Positions 3,406-49,906 of a stretch of 60,401 nucleotides of DNA are shown here, piece after piece (the stretch's first letter is position 1; the number at the start of each line of letters is the position of its first letter). The DNA is from Octopus bimaculoides (taxonomy: Eukaryota): the NCBI RefSeq assembly GCF_001194135.2, contig NC_069003.1:23854587-23914987 (forward strand). Direction: 5' to 3'. The notes beneath the pieces are model-generated. The model worked only from the letters and a program-made list of their open reading frames with translations, was not told where the DNA came from and searched no databases. The translations under genes and the position numbers were made by a program.

Positions 3406-3585
3406 ATGGCAGCACCATATCGATTACCCTCCAATTACATAAGACAGCAAGGCAATTCTGGCAGACACTTTGTTGGACGACATGATGAGAGGGAAAAGCT
3501 GAAGATCTTGATCAAGGATGAAGATACTCAAATAATACAAGTTCATGGACTGCCTTATGTTGGCAAAACAAGATTTGTGAAAACT
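3406..3585 (+). CDS. STAND/NB-ARC-TPR gene exon 1 (FVGR..E motif and Walker A GLPYVGKT)
   Basis: ATG 3406 with in-frame TGA at 3394-3396. Encodes MAAPYRLPSN...HFVGRHDEREKLKILI...IIQVHGLPYVGKTRFVKT. Donor GTAAG at 3586, phase 0. Confidence 0.85.
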
Positions 3586-3875
3586 GTAAGAAATTTAATA
3601 TTGTTTTCTCTTTTTTTTTACGTTAACCTTTTTGCATTTTGCCTTTCTGTAGGTTATTAATGATCATTGAGGTTTTACAGTTAAGTTACCGTAAATCCCA
3701 TACAATGGCAGTCACTGAAGCCTTTGTACCATTTGGTGAGTTGATGGTTGACTTATGATCAAAGGAATTTCACCTGTAACCATCCTGTCTAATTAAAGGT
3801 GGCAAAGATTACATTATTTAATGTATCCTGAACTATGTTATGAAACAGACGGGCAGTTGACTGCTTTATATATTA

Positions 3876-4143
3876 TGACACATGAAATCTTCCGAGCGGA
3901 ATCGTTGCCGGTGCCCCTGGGCTGGCTCTTGTGCGGGTGACACATGAGGTTTTTCGAGCGAGATCATTGCCAGTGCCCCTGGACTGGCTCTTGTGCTGGT
4001 GACACATGAAATCTCTTCGAGCGAGATCGTTGCCGGTGCCCCTGAACTGGCTTTTGTGTGGGGTTGTTGTAGGATTTTCGAGCGANNNNNNNNNNCAACC
4101 CATGCTAGCATGGAAAGCGGACGTTAAACGATGACGACGACGA
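3876..4143 (+). mobile_element. RTE-type 3' tail repeat with ~62-bp internal tandem units
   Basis: Ends AACCCATGCTAGCATGGAAAGCGGACGTTAAACGATGACGACG. Contains 3+ copies of TGACACATGA...GCTCTTGTG. Confidence 0.7.
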
Positions 4144-4703
4144 CGTATGTATGTAAGTGGGTAGGGAGGTTGACTGAAAACTGGGGAGCTGCACCAGGTT
4201 CCAATCTAATTTGACATGGTCTCTACAGTTGAATGCCCCTCCCAACAGCAACCACTGCAAGAGTGTAAGGGGTGTTTTCTACGTGCCAATTATGAAACAC
4301 CAGCATTAGCCATGACTACGATCTCACTAGGCTTGACAGATCTCATGCATGAGACTAGTTAATTGATAGACAGAGAGTTAGAGAGGTAGATGAAATAAGA
4401 GATGGATAGTAAAAGAGATGAAGCAACTGTGCAATTAATAGAAAGATAGTTAAAGAGACAGAGTGGCAAACTGACAAACTGCTATCTAGAAAGATACTTA
4501 GACAAACTGTTAGATGAATATAAAGGAAGTCACTTAGATACACTGAACTAATGCATAGATAAAAGAATAGACAAAGAGACAGTTATTGATAGAGAATTAT
4601 ATAGTCAGACGGAGAAAGAGACAAACTGAGAGACCAATAAATTGATAAGTGAATCTATCAAAATCTTTGAACTTATTCTAATGTTATGTTTCTAATATGA
4701 CAG

Positions 4704-5884
4704 GTCTGTCAAGAATTGAAGGATGAAATTAACCCTGAAAGACTCCACATAAAANNNNNNNNNNNNNNNNNNNNNNNNNNNNNNNNNNNNNNNNNNNNNN
4801 NNNNNNNNNNNNNNNNNNNNNNNNNNNNNNNNNNNNNNNNNNNNNNNNNNNNNNNNNNNNNNNNNNNNNNNNNNNNNNNNNNNNNNNNNNNNNNNNNNNN
4901 NNNNNNNNNNNNNNNNNNNNNNNNNNNNNNNNNNNNNNNNNNNNNNNNNNNNNNNNNNNNNNNNNNNNNNNNNNNNNNNNNNNNNNNNNNNNNNNNNNNN
5001 NNNNNNNNNNNNNNNNNNNNNNNNNNNNNNNNNNNNNNNNNNNNNNNNNNNNNNNNNNNNNNNNNNNNNNNNNNNNNNNNNNNNNNNNNNNNNNNNNNNN
5101 NNNNNNNNNNNNNNNNNNNNNNNNNNNNNNNNNNNNNNNNNNNNNNNNNNNNNNNNNNNNNNNNNNNNNNNNNNNNNNNNNNNNNNNNNNNNNNNNNNNN
5201 NNNNNNNNNNNNNNNNNNNNNNNNNNNNNNNNNNNNNNNNNNNNNNNNNNNNNNNNNNNNNNNNNNNNNNNNNNNNNNNNNNNNNNNNNNNNNNNNNNNN
5301 NNNNNNNNNNNNNNNNNNNNNNNNNNNNNNNNNNNNNNNNNNNNNNNNNNNNNNNNNNNNNNNNNNNNNNNNNNNNNNNNNNNNNNNNNNNNNNNNNNNN
5401 NNNNNNNNNNNNNNNNNNNNNNNNNNNNNNNNNNNNNNNNNNNNNNNNNNNNNNNNNNNNNNNNNNNNNNNNNNNNNNNNNNNNNNNNNNNNNNNNNNNN
5501 NNNNNNNNNNNNNNTGGTATCGAGGAAGCTGTTGAAATGACTGATTCTTCTAGTCAACCAGCTTCCAAGATGCATGTTCTGATGCCGCTTGTTGAACAAG
5601 GTTTGATCAATTCAGATTTAGAATTACAGACTTTCCAAGTACAAGAATTAATACGTGCAATTACTAAACAACAGATAGACAATGTACACAGCAATGATTT
5701 GGTAAAGCTCAAATATACAAACATTATTGGGAAAAGTTTGCTGAAGGCTCAAAATATTTATGATAGAGGTCTCATGCATGAAGCACTTGGAATAATGAGC
5801 AATAACTGGGAAAATATTTCATTTCTGATGAAGAAAGGGATTGAAGCACCCTCAGATGGTAGGACATATGGAGTTTATTATGAG
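4704..5884 (+). CDS. STAND/NB-ARC-TPR gene exon 2 region (interrupted by N gap 4755-5514); NTPase core to winged-helix/helical region
   Basis: Acceptor GACAG| at 4703 gives VCQELKDEINPERLHIK in phase 0. After the gap: GIEEAVEM...LVEQGLINSDLELQTFQVQELIRAI...TYGVYYE, donor GTAAGA at 5885. Extra introns may be hidden in the gap. Confidence 0.75.
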
Positions 5885-6363
5885 GTAAGATATTTTGTCT
5901 TAAACAACATGTCTTGTATCTTGTGTTGTCAGTCTTTCATATGTCACATTTTAGTTTAACCTGTGTTATATCTTCCGACATCTTTACCATTGGTTCTCAA
6001 CTGAGGTCCATATAAATTTTTTCTGTCGTGGTGGTGGTGGTTGCAGTGATGGTGAGTGCATAGTGAAAAGTAATTTTTTTTTTAAATAAACTAAATTTTT
6101 TATATCACCTGTCACTTAACACATACGCATCCCAAACTTGCCATTCACCAGTTTCTCGTTTGCCTGTCACAAGGGTAGACGTTTGATAAAATGGGGCTGT
6201 TCTTGCCTGAACCTGTATTCAGCCATGGTCAGCTATTTGTTGCATTCTCAAAGGATCACAAATTATCTGACACTGACAAAAGAAAAGAAGAGGAAGAATA
6301 TACATGAAGAAAATAGTCTGCAAAGAAATATTAGATTGAAAGGTGTATGCAAATTGAAATGTA

Positions 6364-7622
6364 CAGGTTACATGAGGTATTTGAGGACATGCCTTTTTGG
6401 GTCATTGCTACATTTTTTGTTAATCCTATATAATCTTTGTTTCAGAAAATAATAATGGCAGACCCTCAGCTTACTCAAGAAATGAAGATGCATGCTTTTA
6501 TTGTGGTTAAAAATGTTGAGCATAGCAATTTAGAATTATCTCAATTTTTAAAAGTTACCAGATCTTTCATCTACAAAGTTTGTAAGGAGCTTACAGACTG
6601 AAGATGGAAATGTTTCACCAGTATCAAAGCATAAAAAGCATTTTAAACACTCTGAATTCATCAGAACACCTGAATTTATCCAGTAAGTTCAACAGACCAT
6701 TCATTACAATCACAGAAAGTCCTTGAGGTCAATTGCAAAAGATCTCCATGTGTCAGAAGGAACAGTCAGAAATATTGTCCACAAAGACATCAGATATAAG
6801 ACTTACATGATGAGGAAAAGTCAATTTGTCAGAAAAAGCAAAAGAAAATCATTACATCAGATCTCGTAAAAGGCTCTTAAACAAACTGAAAAATCCAGCA
6901 GCAGAAGATTTGATTTGGTTTTTCACAAACGAGAAAAACTTTGACCAAGATCTGAAAGTTAACAGAAGAAATGATAGATGGTTATATGCAGGCTCTTCTG
7001 AAGTTCCAAGTGTGATGCATACAAAATTTTCTGCAACTGTCATGGTTTTAGGGGTTGTCAACAATGAAGGACATGTTATGCCTCCTTACTTCTTTCCACA
7101 AGGCCTTAGAGTTAACTCTGCCACCTACATTGGGATCCTGGAAATGATTGTTAAGCCCTGGATAGACAGTGTATGCAATGAAAAGCCATATGTGTTTCAG
7201 TAAGACTCTGCACTATCACACATGGCTCTAGTAACATAGGAATGGGTGGCTGAAAATGTTCATGATCACAATTGGCCTCCAAATTCCCCAGATCTCAATG
7301 CATTGGATTATTACATGTGGAGCATTGTTGAGAGAGAGGTCAATCAACATGCCCATAACACCAAAGATTCTTTGAAAGCTGCCATAGTCAGAGTAATGTC
7401 CAAAATGAACCAAGAACAATTGACTCGAGCATGGAGATGATTTAGATCTCATATAGAAGCAGTTGCTGAAGTTGAAGGTGGTTTTATTGAATAACATTAA
7501 AGAAAAGAAGGTTCATTTTTTTTCCTCATAGCATTTTTTGATAAATGAAATTATTATCTGTTATTATATATCTGTTTTATTTTATAAACATAAATCTGTC
7601 CTCAAATATCTTATGCACTCTG
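6364..7622 (+). mobile_element. Full-length decayed IS630-Tc1-mariner transposon, maT (DD37D)-like
   Basis: ~28-bp imperfect TIRs (CAGGTTACATGAGGTATTTGAGGACA / TGTCCTCAAATATCTTATGCACTCTG) with TA on both sides. Frameshifted transposase with WFFTNEKNF, FQ*DSA and WPPNSPDLNALDYYMW motifs. Confidence 0.9.
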
Positions 7623-8197
7623 TATATTGGCTCTGAGAATGCCATGTTGCCTTAAATTTTTACTCCTATGAAATTATGATCCCTATATTTTACATATAAG
7701 ATATTTTTTTACTATAAAATTTTTGTTTTCTAGATATGAAATTGTGACCATGTGAATTTTAAAATGTAATTTTTCCTGTTTATGGGAAAAAAACGAAAAA
7801 ATAAGAGTGGATATTTAGTTTATGACTGCTGTGTATGAAGTCTATAAAATTGTGAATAAAGTCTATAAAGTATATACATATCTAGACAAATATTCTATAA
7901 TTATAAACATAATTATTGTTAGGGGTCAGCTAATTGCTTCACCACATACCGAATTTAGAAATAGGACTTTTATATATATATACATATATATATAAAGTGC
8001 ATTAAGTAATCATCGTATTCCAATTTCCTTCACTTTTCAATGAATAGCAGATGAGCGACTATCCTTTGATACAGACACAACACAGGATACACTTTCAGGC
8101 TTTTGGGATAAAGTTTTCAGGAATAACCCAATAGGTTTCCTATTAATTCTGTGAAATATTCATGGGCCCTGCTAGTTATTATTATTAATGTTATTCA

Positions 8198-8402
8198 AGG
8201 AGTAAACTGGCAGAATCGTTAGCATACTGGGCAAAATGCTTAGCGACATTTCATCTGTCTTTATGTTCTGAGTTCAAATGCTGCTGATGTCAACTTTGCT
8301 TTCCGTCCTTTCAGATTCAATAAATTAAGTACCAGTAAAACATTAGGGTCGATGTAATCGATTAGACCCCTTCCCCCAAATTTCAGGCCTTTAGTAGAAA
8401 GG
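8198..8402 (+). mobile_element. SINE, same family as 1591
   Basis: Degenerate head and core. Confidence 0.7.
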
Positions 8403-8697
8403 TTTATTATTATTATTATTATTATTATCATTATTATTATTATTATTATCATTATTCCTCTGGGGCAGTAGAGATTTGAAGTTATTATTTGTCAGAAAAA
8501 AATATTGATTTCAAATTTTGGCACAAAGCCAATAATTTCTGGAAAGAGGTAAATTGATTTGAACCCAGAACATGAAGACGGACAAAATGTCACCATGCAT
8601 TCTGCTTAATATGCTAATGGTTCTGCTGGCTCACCACATCATTTCTACATATTTCTAAATATTAATGCATGTTACTTGTTCTGTATTTGTCTCTTAG

Positions 8698-8854
8698 ATA
8701 ACATTAAAAGCCTCAGATATACTGATGCTATGTCACCCTAGAGATTCAAGGCAGTTTTTCCAAGCATGTCTACAAAACTCCATGTTGTTTGGCAATGAAG
8801 AAGAACAAGCTTTTATGAATATAGCATATGGTGTATCCTTGACAGATTTACCAG
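8698..8854 (+). CDS. STAND-TPR gene exon
   Basis: Acceptor TTTGTCTCTTAG|. Open frame ITLKASDILMLCHPRDSRQFFQACLQNSMLFGNEEEQAFMNIAYGVSLTDLP. Donor GTATGA. Phase 0 in, 1 out. Confidence 0.8.
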
Positions 8855-11469
8855 GTATGATATGACTATGGTGTGTAGATTTTGTCATTCCACTGATGTA
8901 GATAATATGCTTAACAGGAATACATATTGAGCATTTAGCANNNNNNNNNNNNNNNNNNNNNNNNNNNNNNNNNNNNNNNNNNNNNNNNNNNNNNNNNNNN
9001 NNNNNNNNNNNNNNNNNNNNNNNNNNNNNNNNNNNNNNNNNNNNNNNNNNNNNNNNNNNNNNNNNNNNNNNNNNNNNNNNNNNNNNNNNNNNNNNNNNNN
9101 NNNNNNNNNNNNNNNNNNNNNNNNNNNNNNNNNNNNNNNNNNNNNNNNNNNNNNNNNNNNNNNNNNNNNNNNNNNNNNNNNNNNNNNNNNNNNNNNNNNN
9201 NNNNNNNNNNNNNNNNNNNNNNNNNNNNNNNNNNNNNNNNNNNNNNNNNNNNNNNNNNNNNNNNNNNNNNNNNNNNNNNNNNNNNNNNNNNNNNNNNNNN
9301 NNNNNNNNNNNNNNNNNNNNNNNNNNNNNNNNNNNNNNNNNNNNNNNNNNNNNNNNNNNNNNNNNNNNNNNNNNNNNNNNNNNNNNNNNNNNNNNNNNNN
9401 NNNNNNNNNNNNNNNNNNNNNNNNNNNNNNNNNNNNNNNNNNNNNNNNNNNNNNNNNNNNNNNNNNNNNNNNNNNNNNNNNNNNNNNNNNNNNNNNNNNN
9501 NNNNNNNNNNNNNNNNNNNNNNNNNNNNNNNNNNNNNNNNNNNNNNNNNNNNNNNNNNNNNNNNNNNNNNNNNNNNNNNNNNNNNNNNNNNNNNNNNNNN
9601 NNNNNNNNNNNNNNNNNNNNNNNNNNNNNNNNNNNNNNNNNNNNNNNNNNNNNNNNNNNNNNNNNNNNNNNNNNNNNNNNNNNNNNNNNNNNNNNNNNNN
9701 NNNNNNNNNNNNNNNNNNNNNNNNNNNNNNNNNNNNNACAGCCTTTGAAAATTGCCAAGAATTAAGCGTACAGTAAATGTATGCCTCTTTTAGGTGTTTT
9801 TATTTCAATAGGTACACAAGATAAAGCAAGCACAATTTTTTTCCCTGTTATTTAGCATAGAGTTGACCATTTCTGAGCAATAACCATGTTAGTTACTATT
9901 ATGGGAGTGTCAGAATAATCTTTTGAGATATGTGCAATTTCAAAATTTCTCAAAAAATGCCCATTTTAATTCCCTTAGTTGACCATATGCGTAGTTTACT
10001 ATCATTTTGAAATTTTTACCACGCACTTTGACACTTTCGAAAATGATGTAACAGAAATTTGGTTTTGCTGCTGAACTTCTTTTTAGAGTTGTGAATTTTT
10101 AGAAATTCATTTGTCTGCACTTTGTACAGGATCAACTTATTCATAAAGCATGGATATAAAACAGCATATTACACATCAGTGATTTATTCAATATAGTATA
10201 AATAAACATCTTTTTAATTAATTGATATTTATTGATTCAACAAATGGCAAACTACTACATGTATATCCATAACCATGTTTTACATGATAGTGTACTGAGC
10301 CACACATAAAACATGGATGTTAAACAGTTAGAATTCACAAGAAATTCAACATAAATTCATTTTAATCAGATATAGAATACTATATTGCCCTTCATTGAAT
10401 TATTCAATACAGTACCTATTGAGTCATTGATGACAAACTTGAGCACTTTTNNNNNNNNNNNNNNNNNNNNNNNNNNNNNNNNNNNNNNNNNNNNNNNNNN
10501 NNNNNNNNNNNNNNNNNNNNNNNNNNNNNNNNNNNNNNNNNNNNNNNNNNNNNNNNNNNNNNNNNNNNNNNNNNNNNNNNNNNNNNNNNNNNNNNNNNNN
10601 NNNNNNNNNNNNNNNNNNNNNNNNNNNNNNNNNNNNNNNNNNNNNNNNNNNNNNNNNNNNNNNNNNNNNNNNNNNNNNNNNNNNNNNNNNNNNNNNNNNN
10701 NNNNNNNNNNNNNNNNNNNNNNNNNNNNNNNNNNNNNNNNNNNNNNNNNNNNNNNNNNNNNNNNNNNNNNNNNNNNNNNNNNNNNNNNNNNNNNNNNNNN
10801 NNNNNNNNNNNNNNNNNNNNNNNNNNNNNNNNNNNNNNNNNNNNNNNNNNNNNNNNNNNNNNNNNNNNNNNNNNNNNNNNNNNNNNNNNNNNNNNNNNNN
10901 NNNNNNNNNNNNNNNNNNNNNNNNNNNNNNNNNNNNNNNNNNNNNNNNNNNNNNNNNNNNNNNNNNNNNNNNNNNNNNNNNNNNNNNNNNNNNNNNNNNN
11001 NNNNNNNNNNNNNNNNNNNNNNNNNNNNNNNNNNNNNNNNNNNNNNNNNNNNNNNNNNNNNNNNNNNNNNNNNNNNNNNNNNNNNNNNNNNNNNNNNTGT
11101 TGTTGTTGTTGCTGCTGCTGCTGCACCTGTTATTGTTGCTGACCTTCAGGTCAGTTTTGATAGAATGACCTATGATCAAAGATGTTCTGTCTGATCGTAC
11201 TACCTGCTATGTATATCTAGGACTACATCATCTAGTGTGATATTCCTTTTTGTAAGAAAACTCAGTGTGATTTGAGGGAAATTTGGCTGTTATTTCTGAC
11301 AAATTTGAGTGACTGTGTAGAGGCTACCATTGCCAGTGATGTTGTCTGTTGCTTTTTATTGTTTGTAGATATTGCCGTTGATGTTGATGTTGTTGTTGTT
11401 GTTGGTGGTGGTGTTGCTATTACTTTGGGCATCATTATAACACAGAATATTTTCTTGTGTCTTCTACAG

Positions 11470-11617
11470 GTTATGGAGGATACAATGAAGCCATGGTGCA
11501 CTACAAGAAGGCTTTGGATGTATTGAAATCAAGAAACAGCCAGTACCGACAAGCGCTGCTGTACAATAGCATGGCTCTCAATGCCTATATGCAAAGCAGT
11601 TATGTGGAAGCCTTGAA
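11470..11617 (+). CDS. STAND-TPR gene exon (TPR-like)
   Basis: Acceptor TCTTCTACAG|. Encodes GYGGYNEAMVHYKKALDVLKSRNSQYRQALLYNSMALNAYMQSSYVEAL. Donor GTATGT at 11618 (phase 2) matches the next exon. Confidence 0.85.
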
Positions 11618-11674
11618 GTATGTTGTACAAGTCAGAGGAAAATCTCTCCCTCCCTCCTGCCCACTCATTTCACA

Positions 11675-11723
<49 letters not shown>

Positions 11724-12114
11724 ATCCATTATACTATCTCCCAACTGTCTTTTCTCTTATTCTCTGTTTTTCTTTCTTCCTCGTTCATTTCTAACTTTCT
11801 CTCACTTTCACTTTTGTCCTTTAGTATAGTGCACACTAATTAACATGTGATACTCATCTTATTAATTATATTAGATCCTATATTACTTACAAATTTATGT
11901 TAATTAAATATCATCATCATCCTCATTATTAATGTCCCTTTTTCCTTGCTGGCATGGGTTGGACAGTTTGACCAGAACAGACAAGCCAGAGTGCTCTGCC
12001 AGCTGCTATGCTTGCTTTTGCATGGTTTTATAGCTGAGTGCAAGATAAAACCCCTCAACTGAATGGAGTACAAACTGGAGAATAAAGCTCTGATAAAACA
12101 TTTTAGCAAAATAT

Positions 12115-12205
<91 letters not shown>

Positions 12206-12849
12206 NNNNNNNNNNNNNNNNNNNNNNNNNNNNNNNNNNNNNNNNNNNNNNNNNNNNNNNNNNNNNNNNNNNNNNNNNNNNNNNNNNNNNNNNNNNNNNN
12301 NNNNNNNNNNNNNNNNNNNNNNNNNNNNNNNNNNNNNNNNNNNNNNNNNNNNNNNNNNNNNNNNNNNNNNNNNNNNNNNNNNNNNNNNNNNNNNNNNNNN
12401 NNNNNNNNNNNNNNNNNNNNNNNNNNNNNNNNNNNNNNNNNNNNNNNNNNNNNNNNNNNNNNNNNNNNNNNNNNNNNNNNNNNNNNNNNNNNNNNNNNNN
12501 NNNNNNNNNNNNNNNNNNNNNNNNNNNNNNNNNNNNNNNNNNNNNNNNNNNNNNNNNNNNNNNNNNNNNNNNNNNNNNNNNNNNNNNNNNNNNNNNNNNN
12601 NNNNNNNNNNNNNNNATATATATATACACATATATATACATATATATAATTTCAAAAACACGTAAGTTTAAGATGTGGATTATTAAATCAATTAACAGAC
12701 TCCCCTAACTGAATATGTAAAACTGCCAAACCTTTTAAGTTTTAAATGAATATAACAAATCAATTAACTGTTTTCATAATGCTTAGCTAAATAAAAATCA
12801 ATTTTTACACTAAAAAGTAGTAAGGTATCTAATCCTATTTTATTTTATT

Positions 12850-13090
12850 GAAATTTCCTCTCAATTTATCAAAATTAAAGCATTCTATAAAAATTTCCTC
12901 ATAATTTATCAAAACTCCATCTTATTTTGTCAAGATTAAAACATTTTATCAAAAATTTCTCATAGTTTATCAAAATTTGTTCTCAATTAAAATGTTCCTC
13001 ACAATTTATCAAAATTAAAGCATTCTCTCAAAATTTCCTCATAATTTATCAAGATTATGATTTCTCATCTCACAAAATTCCCTCTTAATT
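12850..13090. repeat. AT-rich ~40-bp minisatellite
   Basis: AAATTTCCTC..AATTTATCAAAA recurs. Confidence 0.7.
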
Positions 13091-13384
13091 CATGTTCCAA
13101 ACATTAACTTGATAAAATGACAAAGTTATTCTATGAAATTCTTCATGATTTTCAAAATTAATTGAAACAAAGGTAGTACATTTTAATAGAAATATAATAA
13201 AGAAGGGGTTACATCTGGACCCCTATGAATTCATGTGTTGATGAGGAATATAATGTTAGAGATACTGATGATGATGATGATGATGATGATGAGAAGGAGG
13301 ATGATGATGGTGGTGGTGGTGGTGGTATCAATGATGATAATGATGATGATGATGATGATGATAATTGCTTGATTTGTTCATCAG

Positions 13385-13494
13385 TTTTGCAGAAAAGGGT
13401 TACAATATGACCATTACTGATGCGAGCCCACAAATGGTGAAGGATGCGAAGATCAAATGTGCCTCTACCCTGGCCTACAGTCTCTCATTCATTG
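13385..13494 (+). CDS. STAND-TPR gene exon (TPR-like)
   Basis: Acceptor TTTGTTCATCAG|. Joins as ...EALNFAEKGYNMTITDASPQMVKDAKIKCASTLAYSLSFI. Donor GTAATA. Phase 2 in, 1 out. Confidence 0.75.
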
Positions 13495-14489
13495 GTAATA
13501 ACTGTATTATGTCTCTCATGGTGGTGGTGGTGGTGGTGGTGGTAGTGGTGGTAGTTCTATTTGGTCCCAGGTCAACACTTGTTGAGCAGATCTATTATAA
13601 AAAAAGTCTACCTGCTATAAAAAAAAGTCTACCTGCTATAAAAAGTCTACCTTTTCCCTATGAGTAGGGAACCAAGGGGTACATTGTCTAATGTGCCATT
13701 TTATTAATAAGGCAGTGATTTACAGGGGAAATTTTGATTGTCATCTATTTCTAGCAAGTTGAGTAACCCCATAAAGGCTTCTTTGTTGATTTGTGGTTGT
13801 GGTCATGTATAATATGTGACAGAATGTGGTTTGTGTTTGGTAATAGTTGTGATGAGTGGAGGCACGGGTCTTAGTGTTAAACTCATGATCATAAGATTGT
13901 GGTTTCAATTCCTGAACTGGGCGATGTGTTGTAGTCCACTCAGCTGGCAAAAATCAGTAATCCTGTGACAGACTGGACAGGTGTGAAATATATATGCCAT
14001 GCAAACTGGGAAACTGCCCCTTATTAGTTGGCATGGCACAAAAAGTGGGGAAAAAGTAATTGCCATGCATGAGAAGATATGTAAGAATAGTAGTAGTGGT
14101 GGTGGTGGTGGTAGTGGTGGTGGTGGTGGTGGTGGTGGTTATGGTGGTGGTGGTGGTGGTGGTGGTGGTTATCATTGTGGTTGTGGTTGTGGATACACAT
14201 GGTAGTTGCTTGTTATATAACCCCAGGTTAACCCCTAATCCAGTAGACCTATGACAAAATGTGTGTCAAATCTTGTCTTTTATTCTGACATCATCAGGCT
14301 ACATGCTGATGGTGTTGTTGTTGTTGTTGTTGTTTAGTCAGACGCCTGTCTCCTGACTATGTGTGTCTCTGACATGTAGGTAAACTGACTGAAAGACTAG
14401 GTACAAACCCATAGTCCCACATGTACCATGTATGCAAATCTGAAGATTACATTATAGATTCTGTCATGTGGTTGTTAAGTGTATGCACA

Positions 14490-14703
14490 TGAGGGGGTGC
14501 TGAGAAGTTCCTGGCTTTGAGCAAAAGAAAATACAGGAGGATCAGTTAATTATGATTTTATTCAACATATTTCCCTCTGAAATTCACACACTTAGTGCAG
14601 TGGTCCTTCAGTTTTTCTAAGCCCTGTAAAAGAACTTGGAAGATTGGACCTTCAAACAGGCCTTTTGTGATATCCTTACAGCCAGAAACTTTTCAGCACC
14701 CTC
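14490..14703 (-). mobile_element. Mariner-derived MITE
   Basis: TIRs GAGGGGGTGCTGAGAAGTTCCTGGCT / AGCCAGAAACTTTTCAGCACCCTC. The interior is the reverse complement of the 33795 copy. Confidence 0.8.
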
Positions 14704-14760
14704 TAATAGAGTGTGGCTGTGTGAACATGTTTAATTTTCACCTGTCTTCTTTTTTTGCAG

Positions 14761-14874
14761 GTTATTATGATAAATGTGAGAAAATATTGAAAGAAAACTT
14801 AAAGGAAATATCAGTCATGAATACTCTTGTTTTATCTAAAATGTTGAATACAATGGGTGTTAATTACGAAAGGA
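14761..14874 (+). CDS. STAND-TPR gene exon (TPR-like)
   Basis: Acceptor TTTTTTGCAG|. Encodes GYYDKCEKILKENLKEISVMNTLVLSKMLNTMGVNYER. Donor GTAAGT. Phase 1/1. Confidence 0.85.
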
Positions 14875-15187
14875 GTAAGTATGGTACCAACATCCCTCTT
14901 TTTTTACCTCTAGATATTTTGTTACTTTCTATTTAAGCACAGGTGTAGCTGTATGGTTAAGAATTTTGTTTCCCAATCACATGTCTAGAATTGTTTGTTC
15001 TTAGCTTAGAACTTACCAACCAGTTGTTTCCCTAAAATATGACATGATTTTACATCCATGTTCAGATCCTGACTGCATCATATTCAAGTTTAGCTTATTC
15101 TAAATTAATTTACCTAAAAGTCTCACAACTGTATTCAAGGCTTTGTCTATACATTATTTATATTTTTTTCATTTTCTCTTTCAACAG

Positions 15188-15331
15188 ATGGTTCACAATG
15201 TGACAAAGCATTTGAATTCTATAATGCTGCACTTAGTGAAAGATTGAAAATTGTTACCGTAAATCCCAAAATATCTGTGATATCATACTGTAATGTAGCA
15301 AAGTTATTATCCCGCGAGTATGGCAGACACA
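15188..15331 (+). CDS. STAND-TPR gene exon (TPR-like)
   Basis: Acceptor CTCTTTCAACAG|. Encodes NGSQCDKAFEFYNAALSERLKIVTVNPKISVISYCNVAKLLSREYGRH. Donor GTAAGT. Phase 1/1. Confidence 0.85.
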
Positions 15332-15414
15332 GTAAGTACATAGTTTTAAGTTGTAAGTAAAATCTAAAACTACTTAAAATATCTGCTTGTTTTCTTTATT
15401 AATATTTCTCCTTC

Positions 15415-15780
15415 TTAAGATGGTGAACTGTCATAATTGCGAACACTTTGGGCAAAGTTCTTAGAGATATTTTGTCTGTTTATATGTTCTGAGTTCAAAT
15501 TCTGCCAAAGTTGACTTTGCTTTCCATCCTTTTGGGGTCAATAATCAGCGTTTCTCCTTTTTTAAGGCGGCAAGCGAGTAGAATCACTAGCATGCTGAGC
15601 AAATTTTTTTAGCAGTATTTTGTTCATTTTTACATTCTGAATTCAAATTCCACTGATGTTGACTTGACCTTACATCCTTTTGAGGTCAATAAAATATTAA
15701 GTACCAGTTGAACACTGGGGTTGATGTAATCAACTTACCCCCTCCCAGAAATTGCTGGGCTTGTGCCAAAATTTGAAAAT
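15415..15780 (+). mobile_element. Two tandem degenerate SINE copies, same family as 1591
   Basis: Two TTCTGAGTTCAAATT...GACTTTGC..TCCATCCTTTTG blocks. Confidence 0.7.
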
Positions 15781-15800
15781 AATATTTTTTCTTCCTCCAG

Positions 15801-15912
15801 GTAAAGCACTACAACTCCTGTTCAGTGCCAAGGATATCCAAAAGAAGCATAGATGGCTACACATGGACACCTCCTTGATATTGCGTTACATTAGTGATGT
15901 GTATTTGAGAAT
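15801..15912 (+). CDS. STAND-TPR gene exon (TPR-like)
   Basis: Acceptor TTCTTCCTCCAG|. Encodes SKALQLLFSAKDIQKKHRWLHMDTSLILRYISDVYLR. Donor GTAAGT. Phase 1 in, 2 out. Confidence 0.85.
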
Positions 15913-16641
15913 GTAAGTACTTTGGTTAGATCAGCCTCATTGGTTGAGTGCATTTGAGAATGGAAGTAGTTTCGTCTGACCAACCAGATTAACTGAGTGC
16001 ATTTGCGAATGTAAGTAATTGGTTGATTGTGAATGTGTGGCTGTGTGTAGTTTAGACAAACACTATTCCAAGAGTTAAACATAATTTTATTTATGCTGCT
16101 CAAGTTGGTCCTGAATTACAAAATTCTCTACATAGAGTCAACAAGATGTAAGAAACTTGATGTCACATGCGCGGTAGCTAGATAGAAAGGTTTAGCACGA
16201 GGGTTGGATTAAACATGGAGATGCCCACTACCTTACTGTACTGGCAGTTCAGCAAAAGACACTGATAGAACAAGTACCAGACTTTAAAAACTAAGTAGTG
16301 GGGTCAATTCATTTGACTAAAAAATTCTTCCGAGCAATACCCCAGCATAGCCATAGTCTAATGACTAAAGCAAATAAAAGATAACAGGTATGTAGCAAAA
16401 TAAATATCTTTTTTATTTGCTTTTATTTCGTTTTCACTCTGTAGAGTTTTTATCTACCAACCACCACCACCACCACTGCCACCACCATTGCCACCACTAC
16501 CACTGCTACCATTACTACTACCATCACCACCACTACCACCATAATTATTATTACTACTGTCACCCTCCACTGCCATCACCACCACCACCACTTTGGATGC
16601 AATTTCATCATCAAGCCACTACGGTCATCTTCTTATTCCAG

Positions 16642-16906
16642 GCAACAAATCTCCAACAGTCTGATATTTTTTCATGAGGCCTTGGCTATCTACAACCAGA
16701 TAAACCCAAATTACCTTGGAAAGATAAAGGTCATTCATGCAATTGCTCACTGCTATCTATTGAAAGAGGAATTCGGTAATGCCAAGAGTACTTTTAAGGG
16801 CATGCTGGAAAGTAAAAGCGACCATTTGTTGAGCGGCGTATCAGAAGTTGAAGTTTTCTCAATGGCTTTAGAACACCTGGTTTATCTCAATTTGGAAAAC
16901 CCTGAG
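16642..16906 (+). CDS. STAND-TPR gene exon (TPR-like); last exon identified, gene continues
   Basis: Acceptor CTTATTCCAG|. Encodes MQQISNSLIFFHEALAIYNQINPNYLGKIKVIHAIAHCYLLKEEFGNAKSTFKGML...LNLENPE. Donor GTATGG. Phase 2 in, 0 out. Confidence 0.85.
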
Positions 16907-16947
16907 GTATGGTTAATTATCACATATGTTGTAATAGTTGATTGAAT

Positions 16948-17503: not shown

Positions 17504-18790
17504 TAATTACGGTTTTCTAAGGAACGCTTGCAATCACAAAAACACACACATCTGAGTTTATCGTAGGTCAGCCTATATGTCCGAATGCAACTTTCGTTAG
17601 GAAATTCTCTCTGAAGAAATACCCAAGTGAGTGGTTTCAAATATGGGAAATTGAATTTTATTTCAGTAATTGCATTGATTGGGTGTGGAAACAGCTGTAG
17701 GCAGGAATTTCCATGCATGAATTTGAATGTCTTTAAATAAATAACATTTGTACGTCAATTTTTTCTATTTTCTTCATTTTCTCATTCATATATATATAAA
17801 GTTAAACACACACACACACATACACATGTACACACGCATATGTGTGTGTGTGTGTGTGTGTAGCGGTAGCTAGATAGTTGAATGATCTCCCTTACAAGAA
17901 AGATCATAGAATAACCTTCCTTTTATAAGTTTCTCGAAGCATCTATGAGACATGATTTTTAACCCTTCAAGAAGCTTAACGTTTCTCTTGGAAGTTTCAA
18001 GACTGTCTAGCGTTCCATTAATAAAAACAGCTAGCTAACCCAGCTTTTCACTTCTTAGTCAATTAGACTTAGACCCATTCTCCTCATTTGCCATGTCCGT
18101 CTATGCCACATGACTGAAACCACCACTTAGCTGTTATTTTTAAATTTTCTTTCTCTGAACTTTCTTGCATAAATTACTTCATTCAACTAGATTCTACAAT
18201 GTGATTCTATATATATATATATATATATATATNNNNNNNNNNNNNNNNNNNNNNNNNNNNNNNNNNNNNNNNNNNNNNNNNNNNNNNNNNNNNNNNNNNN
18301 NNNNNNNNNNNNNNNNNNNNNNNNNNNNNNNNNNNNNNNNNNNNNNNNNNNNNNNNNNNNNNNNNNNNNNNNNNNNNNNNNNNNNNNNNNNNNNNNNNNN
18401 NNNNNNNNNNNNNNNNNNNNNNNNNNNNNNNNNNNNNNNNNNNNNNNNNNNNNNNNNNNNNNNNNNNNNNNNNNNNNNNNNNNNNNNNNNNNNNNNNNNN
18501 NNNNNNNNNNNNNNNNNNNNNNNNNNNNNNNNNNNNNNNNNNNNNNNNNNNNNNNNNNNNNNNNNNNNNNNNNNNNNNNNNNNNNNNNNNNNNNNNNNNN
18601 NNNNNNNNNNNNNNNNNNNNNNNNNNNNNNNNNNNNNNNNNNNNNNNNNNNNNNNNNNNNNNNNNNNNNNNNNNNNNNNNNNNNNNNNNNNNNNNNNNNN
18701 NNNNNNNNNNNNNNNNNNNNNNNNNNNNNNNNNNNNNNNNNNNNNNNNNNNNNNNNNNNNNNNNNNNNNNNNNNNNNNNNNNNNNNNNNN

Positions 18791-18827
<37 letters not shown>

Positions 18828-18837
18828 AGTCACTGCC

Positions 18838-19067
18838 TGGAATCGAACTCGGAATCTTGGGGGTTAGGAGCCAGCGCGCTTAACCACTACGCCATATGCC
18901 CACGGGCATATGGCGTAGTGGTTTTACGGCTGCATGCCCTTCCTAATACCAGCCATTCTGTAGAGTGGACTTAGTGCTTTTTATGTGGCACAGATGAGTA
19001 GTGGTTAACCGTTACGTAGTGGTTAAGAGCGCGGGCTACTAACCCCAAGATTCCGAGTTCGATTCCA
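18838..19067. repeat. Palindromic head-to-head tRNA-like element with a 91-bp insert
   Basis: The left arm 18838-18901 is the near-perfect reverse complement of 18904-18923 plus 19025-19067. Confidence 0.9.
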
Positions 19068-19070
19068 ATA

Positions 19071-19575
19071 ATAATTGTTGTATTCCTCTCGGGAACTCGC
19101 AGAGAAAATACAACGAGTTGTACAACTTAATCATTACATTATTTATCAACCATAACAAAAGACTCACTCACCGAATGTTAATTATCAAGAAACGTTTGTG
19201 TTTACAAGAATGTTTTCCTCGCCATATATCTCAATCCAGTTCAACTTTGACAGTCACTCAAAACAGCAACGAAACAGGGACCTCAGACGAACTACATTCA
19301 ACTATGGGACTTCAGACGAACTACATTCAAATATGGGACTTCAGACGAACAACAAATAAATCTAATAGTCCATATAACAATAATAATTATAACAACAACA
19401 TCAACATCGAAAAATACCTTAGGAATGAGAACCCAGGTTTGAAATTCCCCCAATACACCTGATGAAAACTGGAGGGTATATCAGCCAAAATGTTGTGTTA
19501 ACAACAAACAAGATGAGGACAAATGTCCGTCAATTGTAAATAATGTAAATAATGTCCTCATCTCTTAAATATAGA
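19071..19575 (+). mobile_element. Penelope-like 3' remnant
   Basis: Low-complexity ORF ending IEKYLRNENPGLKFPQYT*, overlapping ACACCTGATGA...CAGCCAAAATGTTGTGT. Confidence 0.45.
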
Positions 19576-21059
19576 ATTGTTGGAAAGCTATTCTTGTTAA
19601 AGAATAATAAATAAATACTCTAGAAAAAGTATTCAGTTTAATGTAAAATTATTGTCAGATAACCAGATATTGTATAGTTGGATGGTTATCTAAAACACAT
19701 GTTCTTCAGAGTCAGAGATGGAAGGCATAGAATAAATATAGTGACTGCTCTTTGTGGCAAGAGGTGACAAAATGCCACATTTGGTTTGTGGCTGTTGTTA
19801 AAGAAAGGAGAGGAAAGAATAAAGAACGAAATGAAGTCATGGAAAATAATTGTATGGAATTTACTAAGAGTTATGTCCCTTGGTCTCTAAACTCTTATCT
19901 TTGGCTGTAAGAATGCGAATCTGTTGGGTAGAAATATGTGTAGGATGTTTAGGGTTTGGTAAGTGTGTAGGGTTGATACATGTTTCGGAGCTCTTTGGTG
20001 GGGTTGGAATAGGGGCACAGATGCCTGAACCTTTAACCCCATGTTTGGGCACGTATGCATACGTGCGTTCGTATGTATATAGTTTTTTGAAGGCACGTGA
20101 CTTGGTGGCAAGGGGCATTCGTCTCACAGTCGTAAGGTCATTAGTTCGACTCCCATTGGCGCTTTGTGTCGTTGAGCAAGATACTTCATTTCAAGTTGCT
20201 CCAGTCCACTCATCTGGCAAAAATGAATAATGCCCATAGTTCAAAGGGCCAGCCCTATCACTCTCTGTGTCATACTGAAATCTCCCTGAGAACTACATTA
20301 AGAGGACATGTGTCTGTAGAGTGTTCAGCCGACCGAAGCTTTGTGATTGAATTTGGTAGGCGGAAGTTACTGCCGTGTGTGTATATGTCTGTGTATGTGC
20401 TTGTGCCTCTCTCCCAGAGNNNNNNNNNNATGTCTGTGTATGTGCTTGTGCCTCTCTCCCAGAGAGTGAGAGAGGGATATATACCAGCCTTAAAAGCGCA
20501 CTTTGGGTGGCATTCAGGTTAGCTTCTGTGGAGGGCACCTTTGAGGCCTTTGGCCCCACAATCTGGTCGCTTTGTGTCCCTCTACCCTTATGTAATGAAA
20601 CTTATTTCTGAAAATGTTCTAAGCACTGATGCTGAGCATAGTTTAGTCAATAAGCATAGGAGCAAGGTAAATGCAGTAAAAATAGGGGATTCAACGGGGC
20701 CCCATTTAAGTGGCCCTTCAGAAATTGAACCTCCTTATGATACTCCCCACGGGTTCATAGTATTAAAGTCATTGTCATTACTCCAATTTGGTCTCCAATA
20801 CCATTTAGTTTAAAATGCAGTAAAAATAGTGGGGTCATTGGGGCCCCAATTAGGCAGCCCTTAAAAAAAATAGACCCCTCAGAACATACCCTGAAATTAA
20901 GGGAGTTGCTGGTTCAAGTTTTATTGTTCTTGCACCAACGGTCTAGGAGGAGTTAGTGAACATAAAAATATAACAGATAGAGAAACATCACTCAAATTTA
21001 TATCAAGATATGGAACATCAGTGTTCAATGTGTGTGTGTGTGTGTATATATATATATTT

Positions 21060-33481: not shown

Positions 33482-33613
33482 TTATTCAGAGGCCCACTGT
33501 AACCTCTCGACATGTTTGAAAATCTTCAGGGCCGGCCCTAAACAGATGTAGTCCCGCAGACCAACCAATACGTCATCGCGCTTCATCAGTAACAGCGATT
33601 TGCCATCAATTTC
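33482..33613 (-). CDS. Double-PHD/SAM gene terminal exon (SAMD1/atherin-like SAM C-half)
   Basis: Acceptor CTCTCTTTCAG|. Encodes [43 protein letters not shown], closely resembling the SAMD1-type SAM ([10 protein letters not shown]...LGPALKI) as recalled. Confidence 0.92.
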
Positions 33614-33794
33614 CTGAAAGAGAGAGAGAGAGTGAAATAATAAGATGCAACATTGAGGCCAGAGAACCGAAAAAAACATGTAGGTACCTGGTCCTTAACA
33701 AACGATGCAGATGAGTGTATTCCCTATAGCAGTGGTTCTCAACTGAGGTCAATATAAGATTTTTTATTAAAATCTATGAGCAATAAATTGCTTA

Positions 33795-34934: not shown

Positions 34935-35092
34935 TGGCATTAGGAAGGGCATCCAGCTGTAGAAACTCTGCCAAATCAGATTGAAGCCTGGTGTAGCCAT
35001 CTGGTTTCACAAGTCTTCAGTCAAATTGTCCAACCCATGCTAGCATGGAAAACGGACGTTAAACGATGATGATGATGATGATGATGATGATG
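34935..35092 (+). mobile_element. RTE-type 3' tail repeat abutting the exon F donor
   Basis: Ends CATGGAAAACGGACGTTAAAC(GAT)n about 10 nt from the donor. Confidence 0.75.
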
Positions 35093-35102
35093 AAAGACTC
35101 AC

Positions 35103-35241
35103 CTGTTCACTGAATGCTGAAGCTTCTTTGGTAAAACCCTTTGACTTGAAGAATTTGACGACATCTTCAATAGTATAGTCCGTGACATCAGGGTAAGGTC
35201 CTTCATAGAGATTACGTTTCCTTGGAAAATCTTGCTGCATT
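35103..35241 (-). CDS. Double-PHD/SAM gene exon F (SAM N-half)
   Basis: Acceptor TTTGTATCCCAG|. Encodes MQQDFPRKRNLYEGPYPDVTDYTIEDVVKFFKSKGFTKEASAFSEQ. Donor GTGAGT. Phase 2 in, 0 out. Confidence 0.9.
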
Positions 35242-39589: not shown

Positions 39590-39890
39590 TATATATATAT
39601 ATGGTGGTTGTCTACTCCGTACACAGAGTTTGACCACCTCCTGTACCTACACCTTAGCCCTTTCATGGCGTCTGATGTGGCTTTTTAAACAAGACAATGT
39701 TCTGAAAAAACACCCACACAGATTGCACCTCTGATTTGAACTACCAATACCTGCAGGTAAGTTCTGCTCATTGTGGATACAAACATGTCTTTTAAGACCC
39801 CCATTGGATTTGCAAGCCCTCTGGCACACACCACATTCAAACGTGTGCACAGACATATAATCAGAATAGTTTGTTGAAGTTTGTTTTCCA
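39590..39890 (-). mobile_element. 5'-truncated LINE 3' end encoding two C2H2 zinc fingers
   Basis: CGVCQRACKSNGGLKRHVCIH and CNLCGCFFRTLSCLKSHIRRH, then a stop, a short UTR and a (TA)n tail. No plausible splice acceptor. Confidence 0.6.
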
Positions 39891-49780: not shown

Positions 49781-49906
49781 TACCTCTCTATCTAGTTAGT
49801 TATCTAGAAAGTTAGATGCAGAGTGAGACATCAACAGGGACATACAGAGCTAGATAGGCTCTGTGTCTGTGTGTGTCAACAGTAAAAATTTATAATTAAA
49901 TCTGAC

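What the first reader, a model, noticed from the sequence alone, without database searches (positions are those of the whole stretch)
3406..16906. NLR-like STAND NTPase plus TPR sensor gene in a cephalopod-type genome
Seen: nine phase-consistent exon segments encode an FVGR..E..L pre-P-loop motif, a beta-strand plus GxxxxGKT, a winged-helix-like segment, then ~350 aa of tandem TPR-like helices. Established: FVGR/GKT NB-ARC plus TPR is the architecture of fungal NLRs, bacterial STAND defence sensors (Avs-type) and some invertebrate immune candidates. Inference: this is a non-canonical innate immune or cell-death sensor that uses TPRs instead of LRRs. Walker B lies in the N gap and cannot be seen.
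Basis: partly seen in the sequence, partly recalled or inferred. Interest (0 to 1): 0.7.

Follow-up and report, generated by a model that had tools for sequence, protein, structure and literature searches.

The report
Octopus NB-ARC-like ATPase with TPR repeats
This is a real ten-exon Octopus bimaculoides gene for a switch-type ATPase (the kind found in Apaf-1 and plant resistance proteins) fused to TPR repeats; it belongs to a small, uncharacterised mollusc-wide family, and an immune role is plausible but unproven.

Summary
The window is Octopus bimaculoides chromosome CM046623.1. Positions 3406-16906 (+) carry nine GT-AG, phase-consistent exons of LOC106871096. The 760-N gap (4755-5514) lies inside exon 2. 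It hides about 202 codons, which in the same-genome paralogue and in O. sinensis orthologues carry Walker B (CIFDDF), RNBS-C, GLPGL and the start of the winged helix. The other gaps are intronic. A tenth exon (about 106 aa) is not readable and probably lies at the 18233-18790 gap.

Full-length relatives are about 855 aa. They have no N-terminal effector domain, an NB-ARC-type NBD-HD1-WHD module, about 12 TPR hairpins and a C-terminal tail with a conserved CxxC. A family profile matches plant NLRs, Apaf-1, AfsR and the archaeal TPR-STAND PH0952. The AlphaFold model matches PH0952 and CED-4. There is no match to NACHT or to Avs families; NPHP3_N scores only below its cutoff.

The family spans molluscs, with 3 or more clustered copies in octopus. 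dN/dS is 0.36-0.43 and never clearly above 1 in the TPRs. Exon 2 appears homogenised between paralogues.

So the architecture is right. "Immune or cell-death sensor" remains an inference. NB-ARC-TPR proteins are already known in other invertebrates, so this is a new member of a known kind.

The parts
3406..3585 (+). Exon 1 (60 codons, ends in phase 0): start codon, short disordered N-terminus, FVGR..E..LK pre-P-loop motif, beta-strand QIIQVH and Walker A GLPYVGKT
   Evidence: 83-88% identical to orthologue residues 1-61. In-frame stop 12 nt upstream of the ATG. This exon is missing from the NCBI model P0001.
4704..5884 (+). Exon 2, interrupted by the assembly gap 4755-5514. Readable parts are 4704-4754 (VCQELKDEINPERLHIK) and 5516-5884 (end of HD1, winged helix with FQVQE in the MHD position, first helices of the repeat region). 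The hidden part is about 202 codons of the NB-ARC core.
   Evidence: Exon 2 is a single 1029-nt exon in O. sinensis (L001 12224-13252). It is intact in the same-genome paralogue (L003 9905-10957). Motifs of the hidden part are shown.
4755..5514 (.). Assembly gap inside exon 2. Written as 760 N; the expected true length is about 605 nt.
   Evidence: The same gap is present in the public chromosome record.
8698..8854 (+). Exon 3 (starts in phase 0, ends in phase 1): helical repeat, ITLKASDILMLCHPRDSRQFF...
   Evidence: 96% identical to P0002 residues 403-455.
11470..11617 (+). Exon 4 (starts in phase 1, ends in phase 2): TPR hairpin, YGGYNEAMVHYKKALDVLK...
   Evidence: The donor at 11618 is fixed by the annotated junction ...EAL-N-FAEKG.
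13385..13494 (+). Exon 5 (starts in phase 2, ends in phase 1): TPR-like helices
14761..14874 (+). Exon 6 (phase 1 at both ends): TPR-like helices
15188..15331 (+). Exon 7 (phase 1 at both ends): TPR-like helices
15801..15912 (+). Exon 8 (starts in phase 1, ends in phase 2): TPR (TPR_12 match begins here)
16642..16906 (+). Exon 9 (starts in phase 2, ends in phase 0): TPR_12 region and the conserved ALEHLVYL motif. It has no stop codon, so the gene continues.
   Evidence: (TPR_12 E=4.9e-10). The NCBI model reads on into the intron here.
18215..19599 (+). Interval that should hold exon 10 (about 318 nt; C-terminal helices and the CxxC tail). It contains the gap 18233-18790 and SINE-like repeats. 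The exon is not readable.
   Evidence: Collinear blastn to O. sinensis brackets the last exon here. No tblastn or blastn trace is found in the readable part.

Best explanation
Positions 3406-16906 (+) hold exons 1-9 of a ten-exon O. bimaculoides gene, LOC106871096. The public model lacks the ATPase part because of the assembly gap.

The protein has about 855 residues in four parts:
- About 20 disordered residues at the N-terminus, with no effector domain.
- A divergent NB-ARC-type STAND module: nucleotide-binding domain, helical domain 1 and winged helix.
- A solenoid of about 12 TPR hairpins.
- A short C-terminal helical tail with a CxxC motif that is conserved across molluscs.

The gene belongs to a small, clustered, fast-evolving family found across molluscs.

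Inferred mechanism: a nucleotide-dependent switch. In the resting state the TPR solenoid and winged helix hold the NBD closed. A ligand or partner bound by the TPR region releases it, nucleotide is exchanged, and the NBD-HD1-WHD modules oligomerise. With no death-fold or TIR domain, the output would have to go through recruited partners or the C-terminal tail.

I put a role in innate immunity or stress surveillance at about 0.35-0.4. That role rests on analogy only. The stated confidence is for the gene structure, the domain architecture and the switch-type mechanism, not for the immune role.
For: Shown:
- Gene structure and identity.
- Content of the gap, inferred from the same-genome paralogue and the orthologues: Walker B CIFDDF, V.PLS..dA..LF, GLPGL, LSYFPG.
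- A profile of the N-terminal 392 aa retrieves 444 proteins. Among 36 hits chosen from that list for scanning, 26 carry Pfam NB-ARC and 34 carry TPR_12.
- The family profile against PDB sequences gives Sr35 at 1.5e-11, aligned motif by motif. It also gives PH0952 1.7e-10, NRC1, Roq1, Apaf-1 1.2e-8 (NBD to WHD), ZAR1 and AfsR.
- The AlphaFold2 model has pLDDT 85.6 and pTM 0.76. Foldseek gives PH0952 (STAND with TPR sensor) at 3.3e-11 and CED-4 with TM 0.62 over about 365 residues.
- TPR_12 scores above its Pfam cutoff.
- Paralogues are clustered. dN/dS is 0.36-0.43.
- A cuttlefish orthologue exists as an intron-less 2.9-kb transcript contig.

Inferred from established knowledge of STAND proteins (Apaf-1, plant NLRs, MalT): autoinhibition by the sensor repeats and ligand-driven oligomerisation.
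Against: - Single octopus sequences score only 15-19 bits on Pfam NB-ARC (cutoff 23.5), and mostly over the P-loop region.
- In octopods the RNBS-B/sensor-1 Arg is absent (LSGG instead of TTR/TSR), and the MHD His is Gln. The nucleotide cycle may therefore be atypical.
- Several bivalve and gastropod relatives have degenerate Walker A and Walker B motifs. This suggests that the wider family can work without hydrolysis.
- No effector domain, no expression data for this locus, and no ligand.
- The NB-ARC core and the last exon of this particular copy are unread.
Confidence: 0.78

Rival explanations
1. It is a non-immune TPR scaffold or adaptor (comparable in use to NPHP3 or kinesin light chain). 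The STAND module is a structural or slow regulatory element, and the gene serves ordinary cell biology rather than defence.
For: - No effector domain.
- The TPRs resemble kinesin light chain most closely by sequence.
- NCBI names a clam relative 'nephrocystin-3-like'.
- Walker motifs are degenerate in bivalve and gastropod relatives, and sensor-1 Arg and MHD His are lost in octopods.
- dN/dS is below 1 throughout the TPR exons.
- The family is small rather than massively expanded.
Against: - NPHP3_N scores below its cutoff and only over the P-loop.
- The family is restricted to certain lineages, clustered, shows paralogue-specific TPR divergence, and has dN/dS of 0.36-0.43, which is high for a housekeeping gene.
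- No orthologue was seen outside molluscs at high similarity.
Confidence: 0.3
2. It is an Apaf-1-type cell-death adaptor paralogue that builds an apoptosome-like platform for a caspase.
For: - The NBD-HD1-WHD fold is closest to CED-4 and Apaf-1 among animal proteins.
- 'Apaf-1-like' NB-ARC proteins with TPRs in place of WD40 are described in amphioxus, sea urchin and Nematostella (PMC2246300; PMC10959488).
Against: - No CARD or other death-fold domain at either end. The N-terminus is 20 disordered residues.
- No WD40 repeats.
- The nearest relatives also lack such domains.
Confidence: 0.08
3. This particular copy is a decaying or truncated paralogue (pseudogene) rather than a working gene.
For: - The NB-ARC core and the last exon cannot be read.
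- Exon 1 shows 10 non-synonymous against 1 synonymous difference to P0002.
- The residue after GKT differs from the family: R-F instead of S-L, at a position that is Leu in 90% or more of relatives.
- The NCBI model ends by reading into an intron.
Against: - All ten readable coding segments are open, and every splice site is canonical.
- Overall dN/dS is 0.43, and 0.22 in exon 2b plus exon 3.
- The unread parts coincide exactly with assembly gaps, so their absence is explained by the assembly.
Confidence: 0.1

Closest known systems
Metazoan 'Apaf-1-like' / NB-ARC-TPR proteins of amphioxus, sea urchin, Nematostella, Hydra and Trichoplax
   Same: An NB-ARC-type STAND ATPase followed by TPR repeats in place of WD40 or LRR, multi-copy and lineage-specific (PMC2246300; PMC6321704).
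   Different: Many of those proteins carry CARD, Death, DED or TIR effector domains. The octopus family has none, and instead has a conserved C-terminal CxxC tail. Direct orthology was not tested. The nearest relatives found are molluscan and one hemichordate.
Apaf-1 / CED-4
   Same: NBD-HD1-WHD fold and motif order. Profile E=1.2e-8 to Apaf-1 residues 124-445. Foldseek TM 0.62 to CED-4.
   Different: No CARD and no WD40. Sensor-1 Arg and the MHD-position His are replaced.
Plant CC-NLRs (Sr35, ZAR1, NRC, MLA13)
   Same: The best sequence-profile matches. P-loop, kinase-2, RNBS-C, GLPL and RNBS-D (LSxFP) align one to one.
   Different: TPR instead of LRR. No coiled-coil or TIR N-terminal executor. 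MHD is VQE.
PH0952 (Pyrococcus STAND with TPR sensor, PDB 6MFV) and bacterial BTAD/kinase-NB-ARC-TPR regulators (AfsR, MalT-like)
   Same: Whole-protein architecture of STAND NTPase plus TPR sensor. This is the top Foldseek hit (3.3e-11, 749 aligned columns). Many bacterial proteins with an N-terminal extension before the NB-ARC-TPR module appear among the profile hits; BTAD was found in 6 of the 36 scanned.
   Different: Those proteins carry DNA-binding or kinase output domains and are prokaryotic. Sequence identity is about 12-15%.
Nephrocystin-3 (NPHP3)
   Same: A P-loop STAND-like N-terminal domain plus TPR_12-type repeats. NCBI names a clam relative 'nephrocystin-3-like'.
   Different: NPHP3_N scores 14-19 bits against a cutoff of 24.8, and only over the P-loop. 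The profile search of PDB sequences returned NB-ARC proteins.
Bacterial Avs (antiviral STAND) sensors
   Same: The general logic of a STAND ATPase with a helical-repeat sensor.
   Different: No match to any Avs model in PADLOC. No nuclease or other effector domain.

Membership tests
NB-ARC / AP-ATPase clade of STAND NTPases | Walker A GxxxxGK[ST] preceded by a beta-strand | tested here: met
   QIIQVHGLPYVGKT in window exon 1.
NB-ARC / AP-ATPase clade of STAND NTPases | Walker B / kinase-2 hhhhDD | tested here: met
   Not readable in the window (it lies in the gap). Present as K(I/F)CIFDDF in the same-genome paralogue and in all octopod orthologues.
NB-ARC / AP-ATPase clade of STAND NTPases | RNBS-B / sensor-1 arginine (TTR/TSR) | tested here: not met
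   Octopod members have ILILSGG / ILILNGG where relatives have TSR/TTR/TSQ. The alignment is at about 20% identity, so it could be offset by a residue or two.
NB-ARC / AP-ATPase clade of STAND NTPases | RNBS-C, GLPL and RNBS-D motifs in order | tested here: met
   V.PLS..dA..LF, CGLPGL and LSYFPG align to EPLS..LF, GGVPLAI and LSIFPE of Sr35. These lie in the window's gap, so they are seen only in relatives.
NB-ARC / AP-ATPase clade of STAND NTPases | Winged-helix domain with MHD histidine | tested here: inconclusive
   The winged helix is present and is visible in the window (exon 2b; model H281-332 with a beta-hairpin). The His position is Gln (FQVQE), whereas some relatives have IH/MH.
NB-ARC / AP-ATPase clade of STAND NTPases | Pfam PF00931 above gathering score | tested here: not met
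   14.8-19 bits against a cutoff of 23.5 for the window fragment and five orthologues. The cephalopod relative P0021 scores 22.4 bits over positions 2-203.
NB-ARC / AP-ATPase clade of STAND NTPases | Profile-level and fold-level similarity to solved NB-ARC proteins across NBD-HD1-WHD | tested here: met
   Sr35 1.5e-11, Apaf-1 1.2e-8, ZAR1, NRCs. CED-4 TM 0.62, with Apaf-1 and NRC3/4 also matched.
TPR repeat proteins | Pfam TPR_12/TPR_2 above gathering score; alpha-hairpin solenoid | tested here: met
   TPR_12 scores 39.9 bits on window exons 5-9 and 45-84 bits on orthologues. The model shows 24 helices over residues 340-800.
Animal NLR sensu stricto (NACHT-LRR) | NACHT domain and C-terminal LRRs | tested here: not met
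   No NACHT or LRR hit in the octopus proteins. No NACHT protein among the listed PDB profile hits.
Apaf-1 orthologue | N-terminal CARD and C-terminal WD40 repeats | tested here: not met
   Neither domain is found. The N-terminus is 20 disordered residues.
Nephrocystin-3 | NPHP3_N domain above cutoff | tested here: not met
   14-19 bits against a cutoff of 24.8, over the P-loop region only.
Avs antiviral STAND | Match to Avs family models; N-terminal effector | tested here: not met
   PADLOC gives only a generic TPR model and two weak PDC P-loop hits.
Immune receptor (functional class) | Induction on infection, ligand recognition, positive selection on the sensor surface | not testable with these tools
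   Only pairwise dN/dS could be computed: 0.33-0.47 in the TPR exons. No paper mentions these loci.

The most novel reading that the evidence does not exclude
Molluscs possess their own effector-less NB-ARC-TPR-CxxC sensor lineage. In octopods it behaves like an NLR birth-and-death locus. The ATPase exon is kept uniform among clustered paralogues by gene conversion while the TPR sensor exons diverge. The switch has lost the sensor-1 Arg and the MHD His, which would make it a slow-hydrolysing, easily triggered switch. The conserved C-terminal CxxC tail would be a new output module.
Probability: 0.2. Interest if true: 0.6.

Novelty: new member of a known kind. Interest (0 to 1): 0.35.

Why it matters
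Cephalopod innate immunity is poorly mapped, and intracellular sensors are among the least known parts of it. This locus shows that octopus has clustered NB-ARC-type STAND genes. The public annotation hides them: an assembly gap removes the ATPase domain, so the product is listed only as an uncharacterised TPR protein.

Recognising the family gives concrete candidates for expression and binding studies. The family runs from octopus and cuttlefish to abalone, limpets, scallops and clams. It also offers a natural series for asking how much a STAND switch needs its ATPase, because it contains members with intact and with degenerate nucleotide motifs.

It does not change what is known about the NB-ARC-TPR architecture, which has been reported in other invertebrates since 2007.

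Tried and rejected
- Paralogues inside the window: tblastn of all exon peptides found none.
- The last exon: tblastn with three full-length relatives and sensitive blastn of 18791-19650 found nothing. That stretch is SINE-like repeat.
- My first donor for exon 4 (11630) broke the reading phase. It was replaced by 11617|GT, using the annotated junction.
- Single-sequence Pfam and PDB searches could not place the ATPase. Pfam gave only sub-threshold P-loop hits, and PDB gave only kinesin light chain TPR. A family profile was needed.
- The two top PDB profile 'hits' are RecA concatemers. They score by six repeats of a 28-residue P-loop match and were disregarded.
- NPHP3, NACHT and Avs membership were considered and rejected.
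- NCBIfam gave only generic TPR matches far below cutoff.
- The C-terminal tail has no Pfam match.
- A literature search for six LOC identifiers found no paper.
- The locus of P0003 is not on record.
- One Pfam call exceeded the size limit and was repeated with fewer proteins.
- Short minus-strand ORFs gave no Pfam hit at E<=0.01. They were identified instead by PDB sequence search.


Full report
**Source and observation**

The window has 37% G+C and 18 runs of N. Over the 26,945 bases compared, it is identical, gaps included, to Octopus bimaculoides assembly GCA_001194135.2, chromosome CM046623.1.

- An ATG at 3406, with an in-frame stop 12 nt upstream.
- The FVGR..E..LK motif, the strand QIIQVH and the Walker A GLPYVGKT in exon 1 (3406-3585).
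- VCQELKDEINPERLHIK at the start of exon 2 (4704-4754), running into the N gap.
- After the gap (5516-5884), a segment that folds as a winged helix and then as helical repeats.
- Seven more helical-repeat exons: 8698-8854, 11470-11617, 13385-13494, 14761-14874, 15188-15331, 15801-15912 and 16642-16906.

All junctions are GT-AG and the phases match. My first choice of donor for exon 4 broke the phase. The annotated product (P0001...YVEAL-N-FAEKGY...) shows that the donor is at 11618.

**It is a real gene**

A search with the joined segments returned NCBI LOC106871096 of O. bimaculoides at 99% identity. It also returned full-length relatives of about 855 aa in O. sinensis, O. vulgaris and Argonauta hians.

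The public O. bimaculoides model (478 aa) begins at the first Met after the gap (window 5537). It ends by reading into the intron after 16906. It therefore lacks exon 1, the readable start of exon 2 and the whole ATPase core.

**The gaps**

Mapping the O. sinensis protein P0002 on its own locus L001 shows ten exons, with exon 2 a single 1029-nt exon covering residues 61-403.

- In the window, exon 2 runs from 4704 to 5884 across the 760-N gap.
- Residues 78-279 of the orthologue (606 nt) fall in the gap.
- In the same-genome paralogue (L003), exactly 605 nt separate the points that match window 4754 and 5515.
- The written gap is thus about 155 nt too long. The apparent frame mismatch across it carries no information.
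- The gaps at 4086-4095, 8941-9737, 10451-11097 and 12206-12615 are intronic. Orthologue residues continue without loss across exons 1-2, 3-4 and 4-5.

The tenth exon (residues 753-858) lies 5.2 kb after exon 9 in O. sinensis. Collinear blastn brackets its position in the window between 18214 and 19600. That interval contains the 558-N gap and SINE-like repeats, and no trace of the exon can be read.

**What the hidden part holds**

The same-genome paralogue and all octopod orthologues carry the following, in order:
- Walker B: K(I/F)CIFDDF.
- KIILILSGG.
- V.PLS..dA..LF.
- CGLPGL.
- LSYFPGRF.

The window's own copy nevertheless remains unread.

**Which STAND family**

Single sequences do not reach any Pfam ATPase cutoff. 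NB-ARC scores 15-19 bits against 23.5. AAA_16, ATPase_2, NPHP3_N and nSTAND6 also fall below threshold, mostly over the P-loop. Only TPR_12/TPR_2 pass. PDB sequence search finds only the kinesin light chain TPR.

A profile of the N-terminal 392 residues from five cephalopod proteins (A1) was searched against 1.84 billion representatives.
- It found 444 proteins at E<=1e-3, but only 19 at E<=1e-10.
- The nearest hits are cephalopod. Next come bivalves and gastropods (Solemya, Pecten, Mercenaria, Pinctada, Potamilus, Patella, Lottia, Haliotis, Batillaria) and one hemichordate. Further down the list are bacterial proteins with an N-terminal extension before the NB-ARC-TPR module.
- Of 36 of these that were scanned, 26 carry Pfam NB-ARC (best E=2.7e-23) and 34 carry TPR_12.

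A wider profile (A3) was searched against PDB sequences.
- Setting aside RecA concatemers that score by repeated P-loops, it gives Sr35 1.5e-11, the Pyrococcus TPR-sensor STAND PH0952 1.7e-10, NRC1, Roq1, MLA13, Apaf-1 1.2e-8 (residues 124-445, from NBD to WHD), ZAR1 and AfsR.
- No NACHT protein is among the listed matches.
- The Sr35 alignment matches P-loop, kinase-2, RNBS-C, GLPL and RNBS-D one to one.

An AlphaFold2 model of P0002 has mean pLDDT 85.6 and pTM 0.76. It shows:
- A Rossmann-like NBD.
- A helical domain.
- A winged helix (residues 281-332).
- About 24 repeat helices (residues 340-800).
- A C-terminal tail.

Foldseek places PH0952 first (3.3e-11 over 749 columns). CED-4 follows (TM 0.62, rmsd about 5 A over about 365 residues), then Apaf-1 and NRC3/4. 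PADLOC has no Avs match.

I conclude that the ATPase is a divergent NB-ARC/AP-ATPase-type STAND module.

**Departures from the canonical module**

- In octopods the RNBS-B position that is TTR/TSR in relatives reads LSGG, so the sensor-1 Arg is absent.
- The MHD-position His is Gln (FQVQE). This is visible in window exon 2b.
- Several bivalve and gastropod relatives have GKA/GKQ/GKR in Walker A and TK/TN/SN in Walker B.
- There is no CARD, Death, DED, TIR or other effector domain in the octopus proteins or in the nearest relatives. The first 20 residues are disordered.
- The C-terminal tail has no Pfam match. It carries a CxxC that is conserved from octopus to abalone, limpets, scallop and Solemya. 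The ALEHLV motif is conserved in the same way.

**Family dynamics**

- The window gene lies about 270 kb from the paralogue LOC106874622 on the same chromosome. A third copy sits head to head with that one.
- In O. sinensis, two full copies 175 kb apart, a partial tandem duplicate of exons 4-10 and further LOC ids were seen.
- Nei-Gojobori dN/dS of the window gene against three relatives is 0.36-0.43 overall. It is 0.33-0.47 in TPR exons 4-9 and 0.22-0.38 in exon 2b plus exon 3. It is about 1 or higher in exon 1, but that rests on very few changes.
- dS is mosaic. Against the same-genome paralogue, exon 2b has dS 0.05 while exons 3-9 have dS 0.7-1.1. This is the pattern expected if the ATPase exon is homogenised by gene conversion while the repeat exons diverge.
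- A cuttlefish orthologue is present as an uninterrupted 845-codon ORF on a 2.9-kb Logan contig. Further members of its cluster sit on similar contigs of about 3 kb (one on 41 contigs). These look like spliced transcripts.

**Interpretation**

The functional claim is an analogy.

NB-ARC proteins with TPRs in place of WD40 or LRR have been described in amphioxus, sea urchin, Nematostella, Hydra and Trichoplax (PMC2246300; PMC6321704). One of these papers remarks that NLRs with TPR, WD40 or ANK repeats seem not to be involved in PAMP recognition. Strict definitions of animal NLRs exclude such proteins (PMC3879445). No paper mentions the octopus loci.

The best-supported mechanism is a nucleotide-dependent STAND switch whose TPR solenoid is the sensor and autoinhibitor. 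This is inferred from the family and has not been shown for this protein. The output is unknown because there is no effector domain.

I put an immune or stress-surveillance role at about 0.35-0.4. I put a non-immune scaffold role at about 0.3, an Apaf-1-like death adaptor below 0.1, and decay of this particular copy at about 0.1.

**Verdict**

This is a genuine, correctly read gene and a useful correction of the public annotation. It belongs to an uncharacterised mollusc-wide family with some interesting features: loss of the sensor-1 Arg and the MHD His, members with degenerate ATPase motifs, a conserved CxxC tail, and gene conversion of the ATPase exon. The kind of protein is already known in invertebrates, and nothing here shows function. 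It is a new member of a known kind, of moderate-to-low interest (0.35).

Noticed in passing
window 5516-5884 versus 8698-16906 (compared with L003): dS against the same-genome paralogue is 0.05 in exon 2b but 0.7-1.1 in exons 3-9. DNA identity is 96% over 5515-5901. This suggests gene conversion that homogenises the ATPase/WHD exon between paralogues while the TPR exons diverge.
   Followed up: partly
window 3406-5536 and 16907-16945; L003 9893-10000: The NCBI models of both O. bimaculoides paralogues are N-terminally truncated. P0001 starts after the gap and reads into intron 9. P0010 starts at an internal Met of exon 2, although the exon continues upstream.
   Followed up: partly
window 6434-7440 (+): A degraded mariner/Tc1-like transposase (DDE_3, E=0.0012...PNSPDLNALDYYMW...) lies inside intron 2. 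A related copy is at L003 34049-35053.
   Followed up: partly
window 35043-35273 and 33485-33694 (-): Two open segments on the minus strand encode a SAM domain closest to SAMD1/Atherin (PDB 6luk, E=4.8e-18). This is probably the 3' end of a neighbouring gene.
   Followed up: partly
window 49899-50126 and 47958-48359 (-): Open segments encode a double PHD finger closest to KAT6A/KAT6B and DPF proteins (PDB 5b78, E=2.2e-17). Whether they belong to the same gene as the SAM exons was not checked.
   Followed up: partly
window 39650-39928 (-): An ORF with two C2H2 zinc fingers (zf-C2H2, E=7.2e-8), flanked by repeats. It may be part of a transposon or a ZNF gene.
   Followed up: no
window 3797-4131 and 18830-19080; also 45282-45506 (+): SINE-like, tRNA-derived-looking repeats occur in intron 1 and downstream of the 18233-18790 gap, some in inverted orientation. 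A Tc1-like transposase tail is at 45282-45506.
   Followed up: no
L001 10575-11157 versus 11692-12274; L001 41635-52152: In O. sinensis, the 3' end of intron 1 together with the first 19 codons of exon 2 is tandemly duplicated. Exons 4-10 are duplicated again 21 kb downstream as a partial copy.
   Followed up: partly
relatives P0026, P0029, P0033, P0035, P0053, P0088 (alignments A3/A4): Some bivalve and gastropod family members have Walker A GKA/GKQ/GKR, and most have Walker B TK/TN/SN/LK, so they look like ATPase-dead STAND modules. Cephalopod members keep GK[ST]; octopods and cuttlefish also keep the DD Walker B (P0021 has KD).
   Followed up: partly
orthologue residues about 815-822 (exon 10, not readable in the window): A CxxC motif in the C-terminal tail is conserved across cephalopod, gastropod and bivalve members. 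It has no Pfam match. It may be a small metal-binding or interaction module.
   Followed up: partly
window 3568-3579 (exon 1): This copy has GKT-R-F where the cephalopod relatives have GKT-x-L, and His for the Tyr/Ile before the P-loop glycine. Exon 1 shows 10 non-synonymous against 1 synonymous change to P0002.
   Followed up: partly
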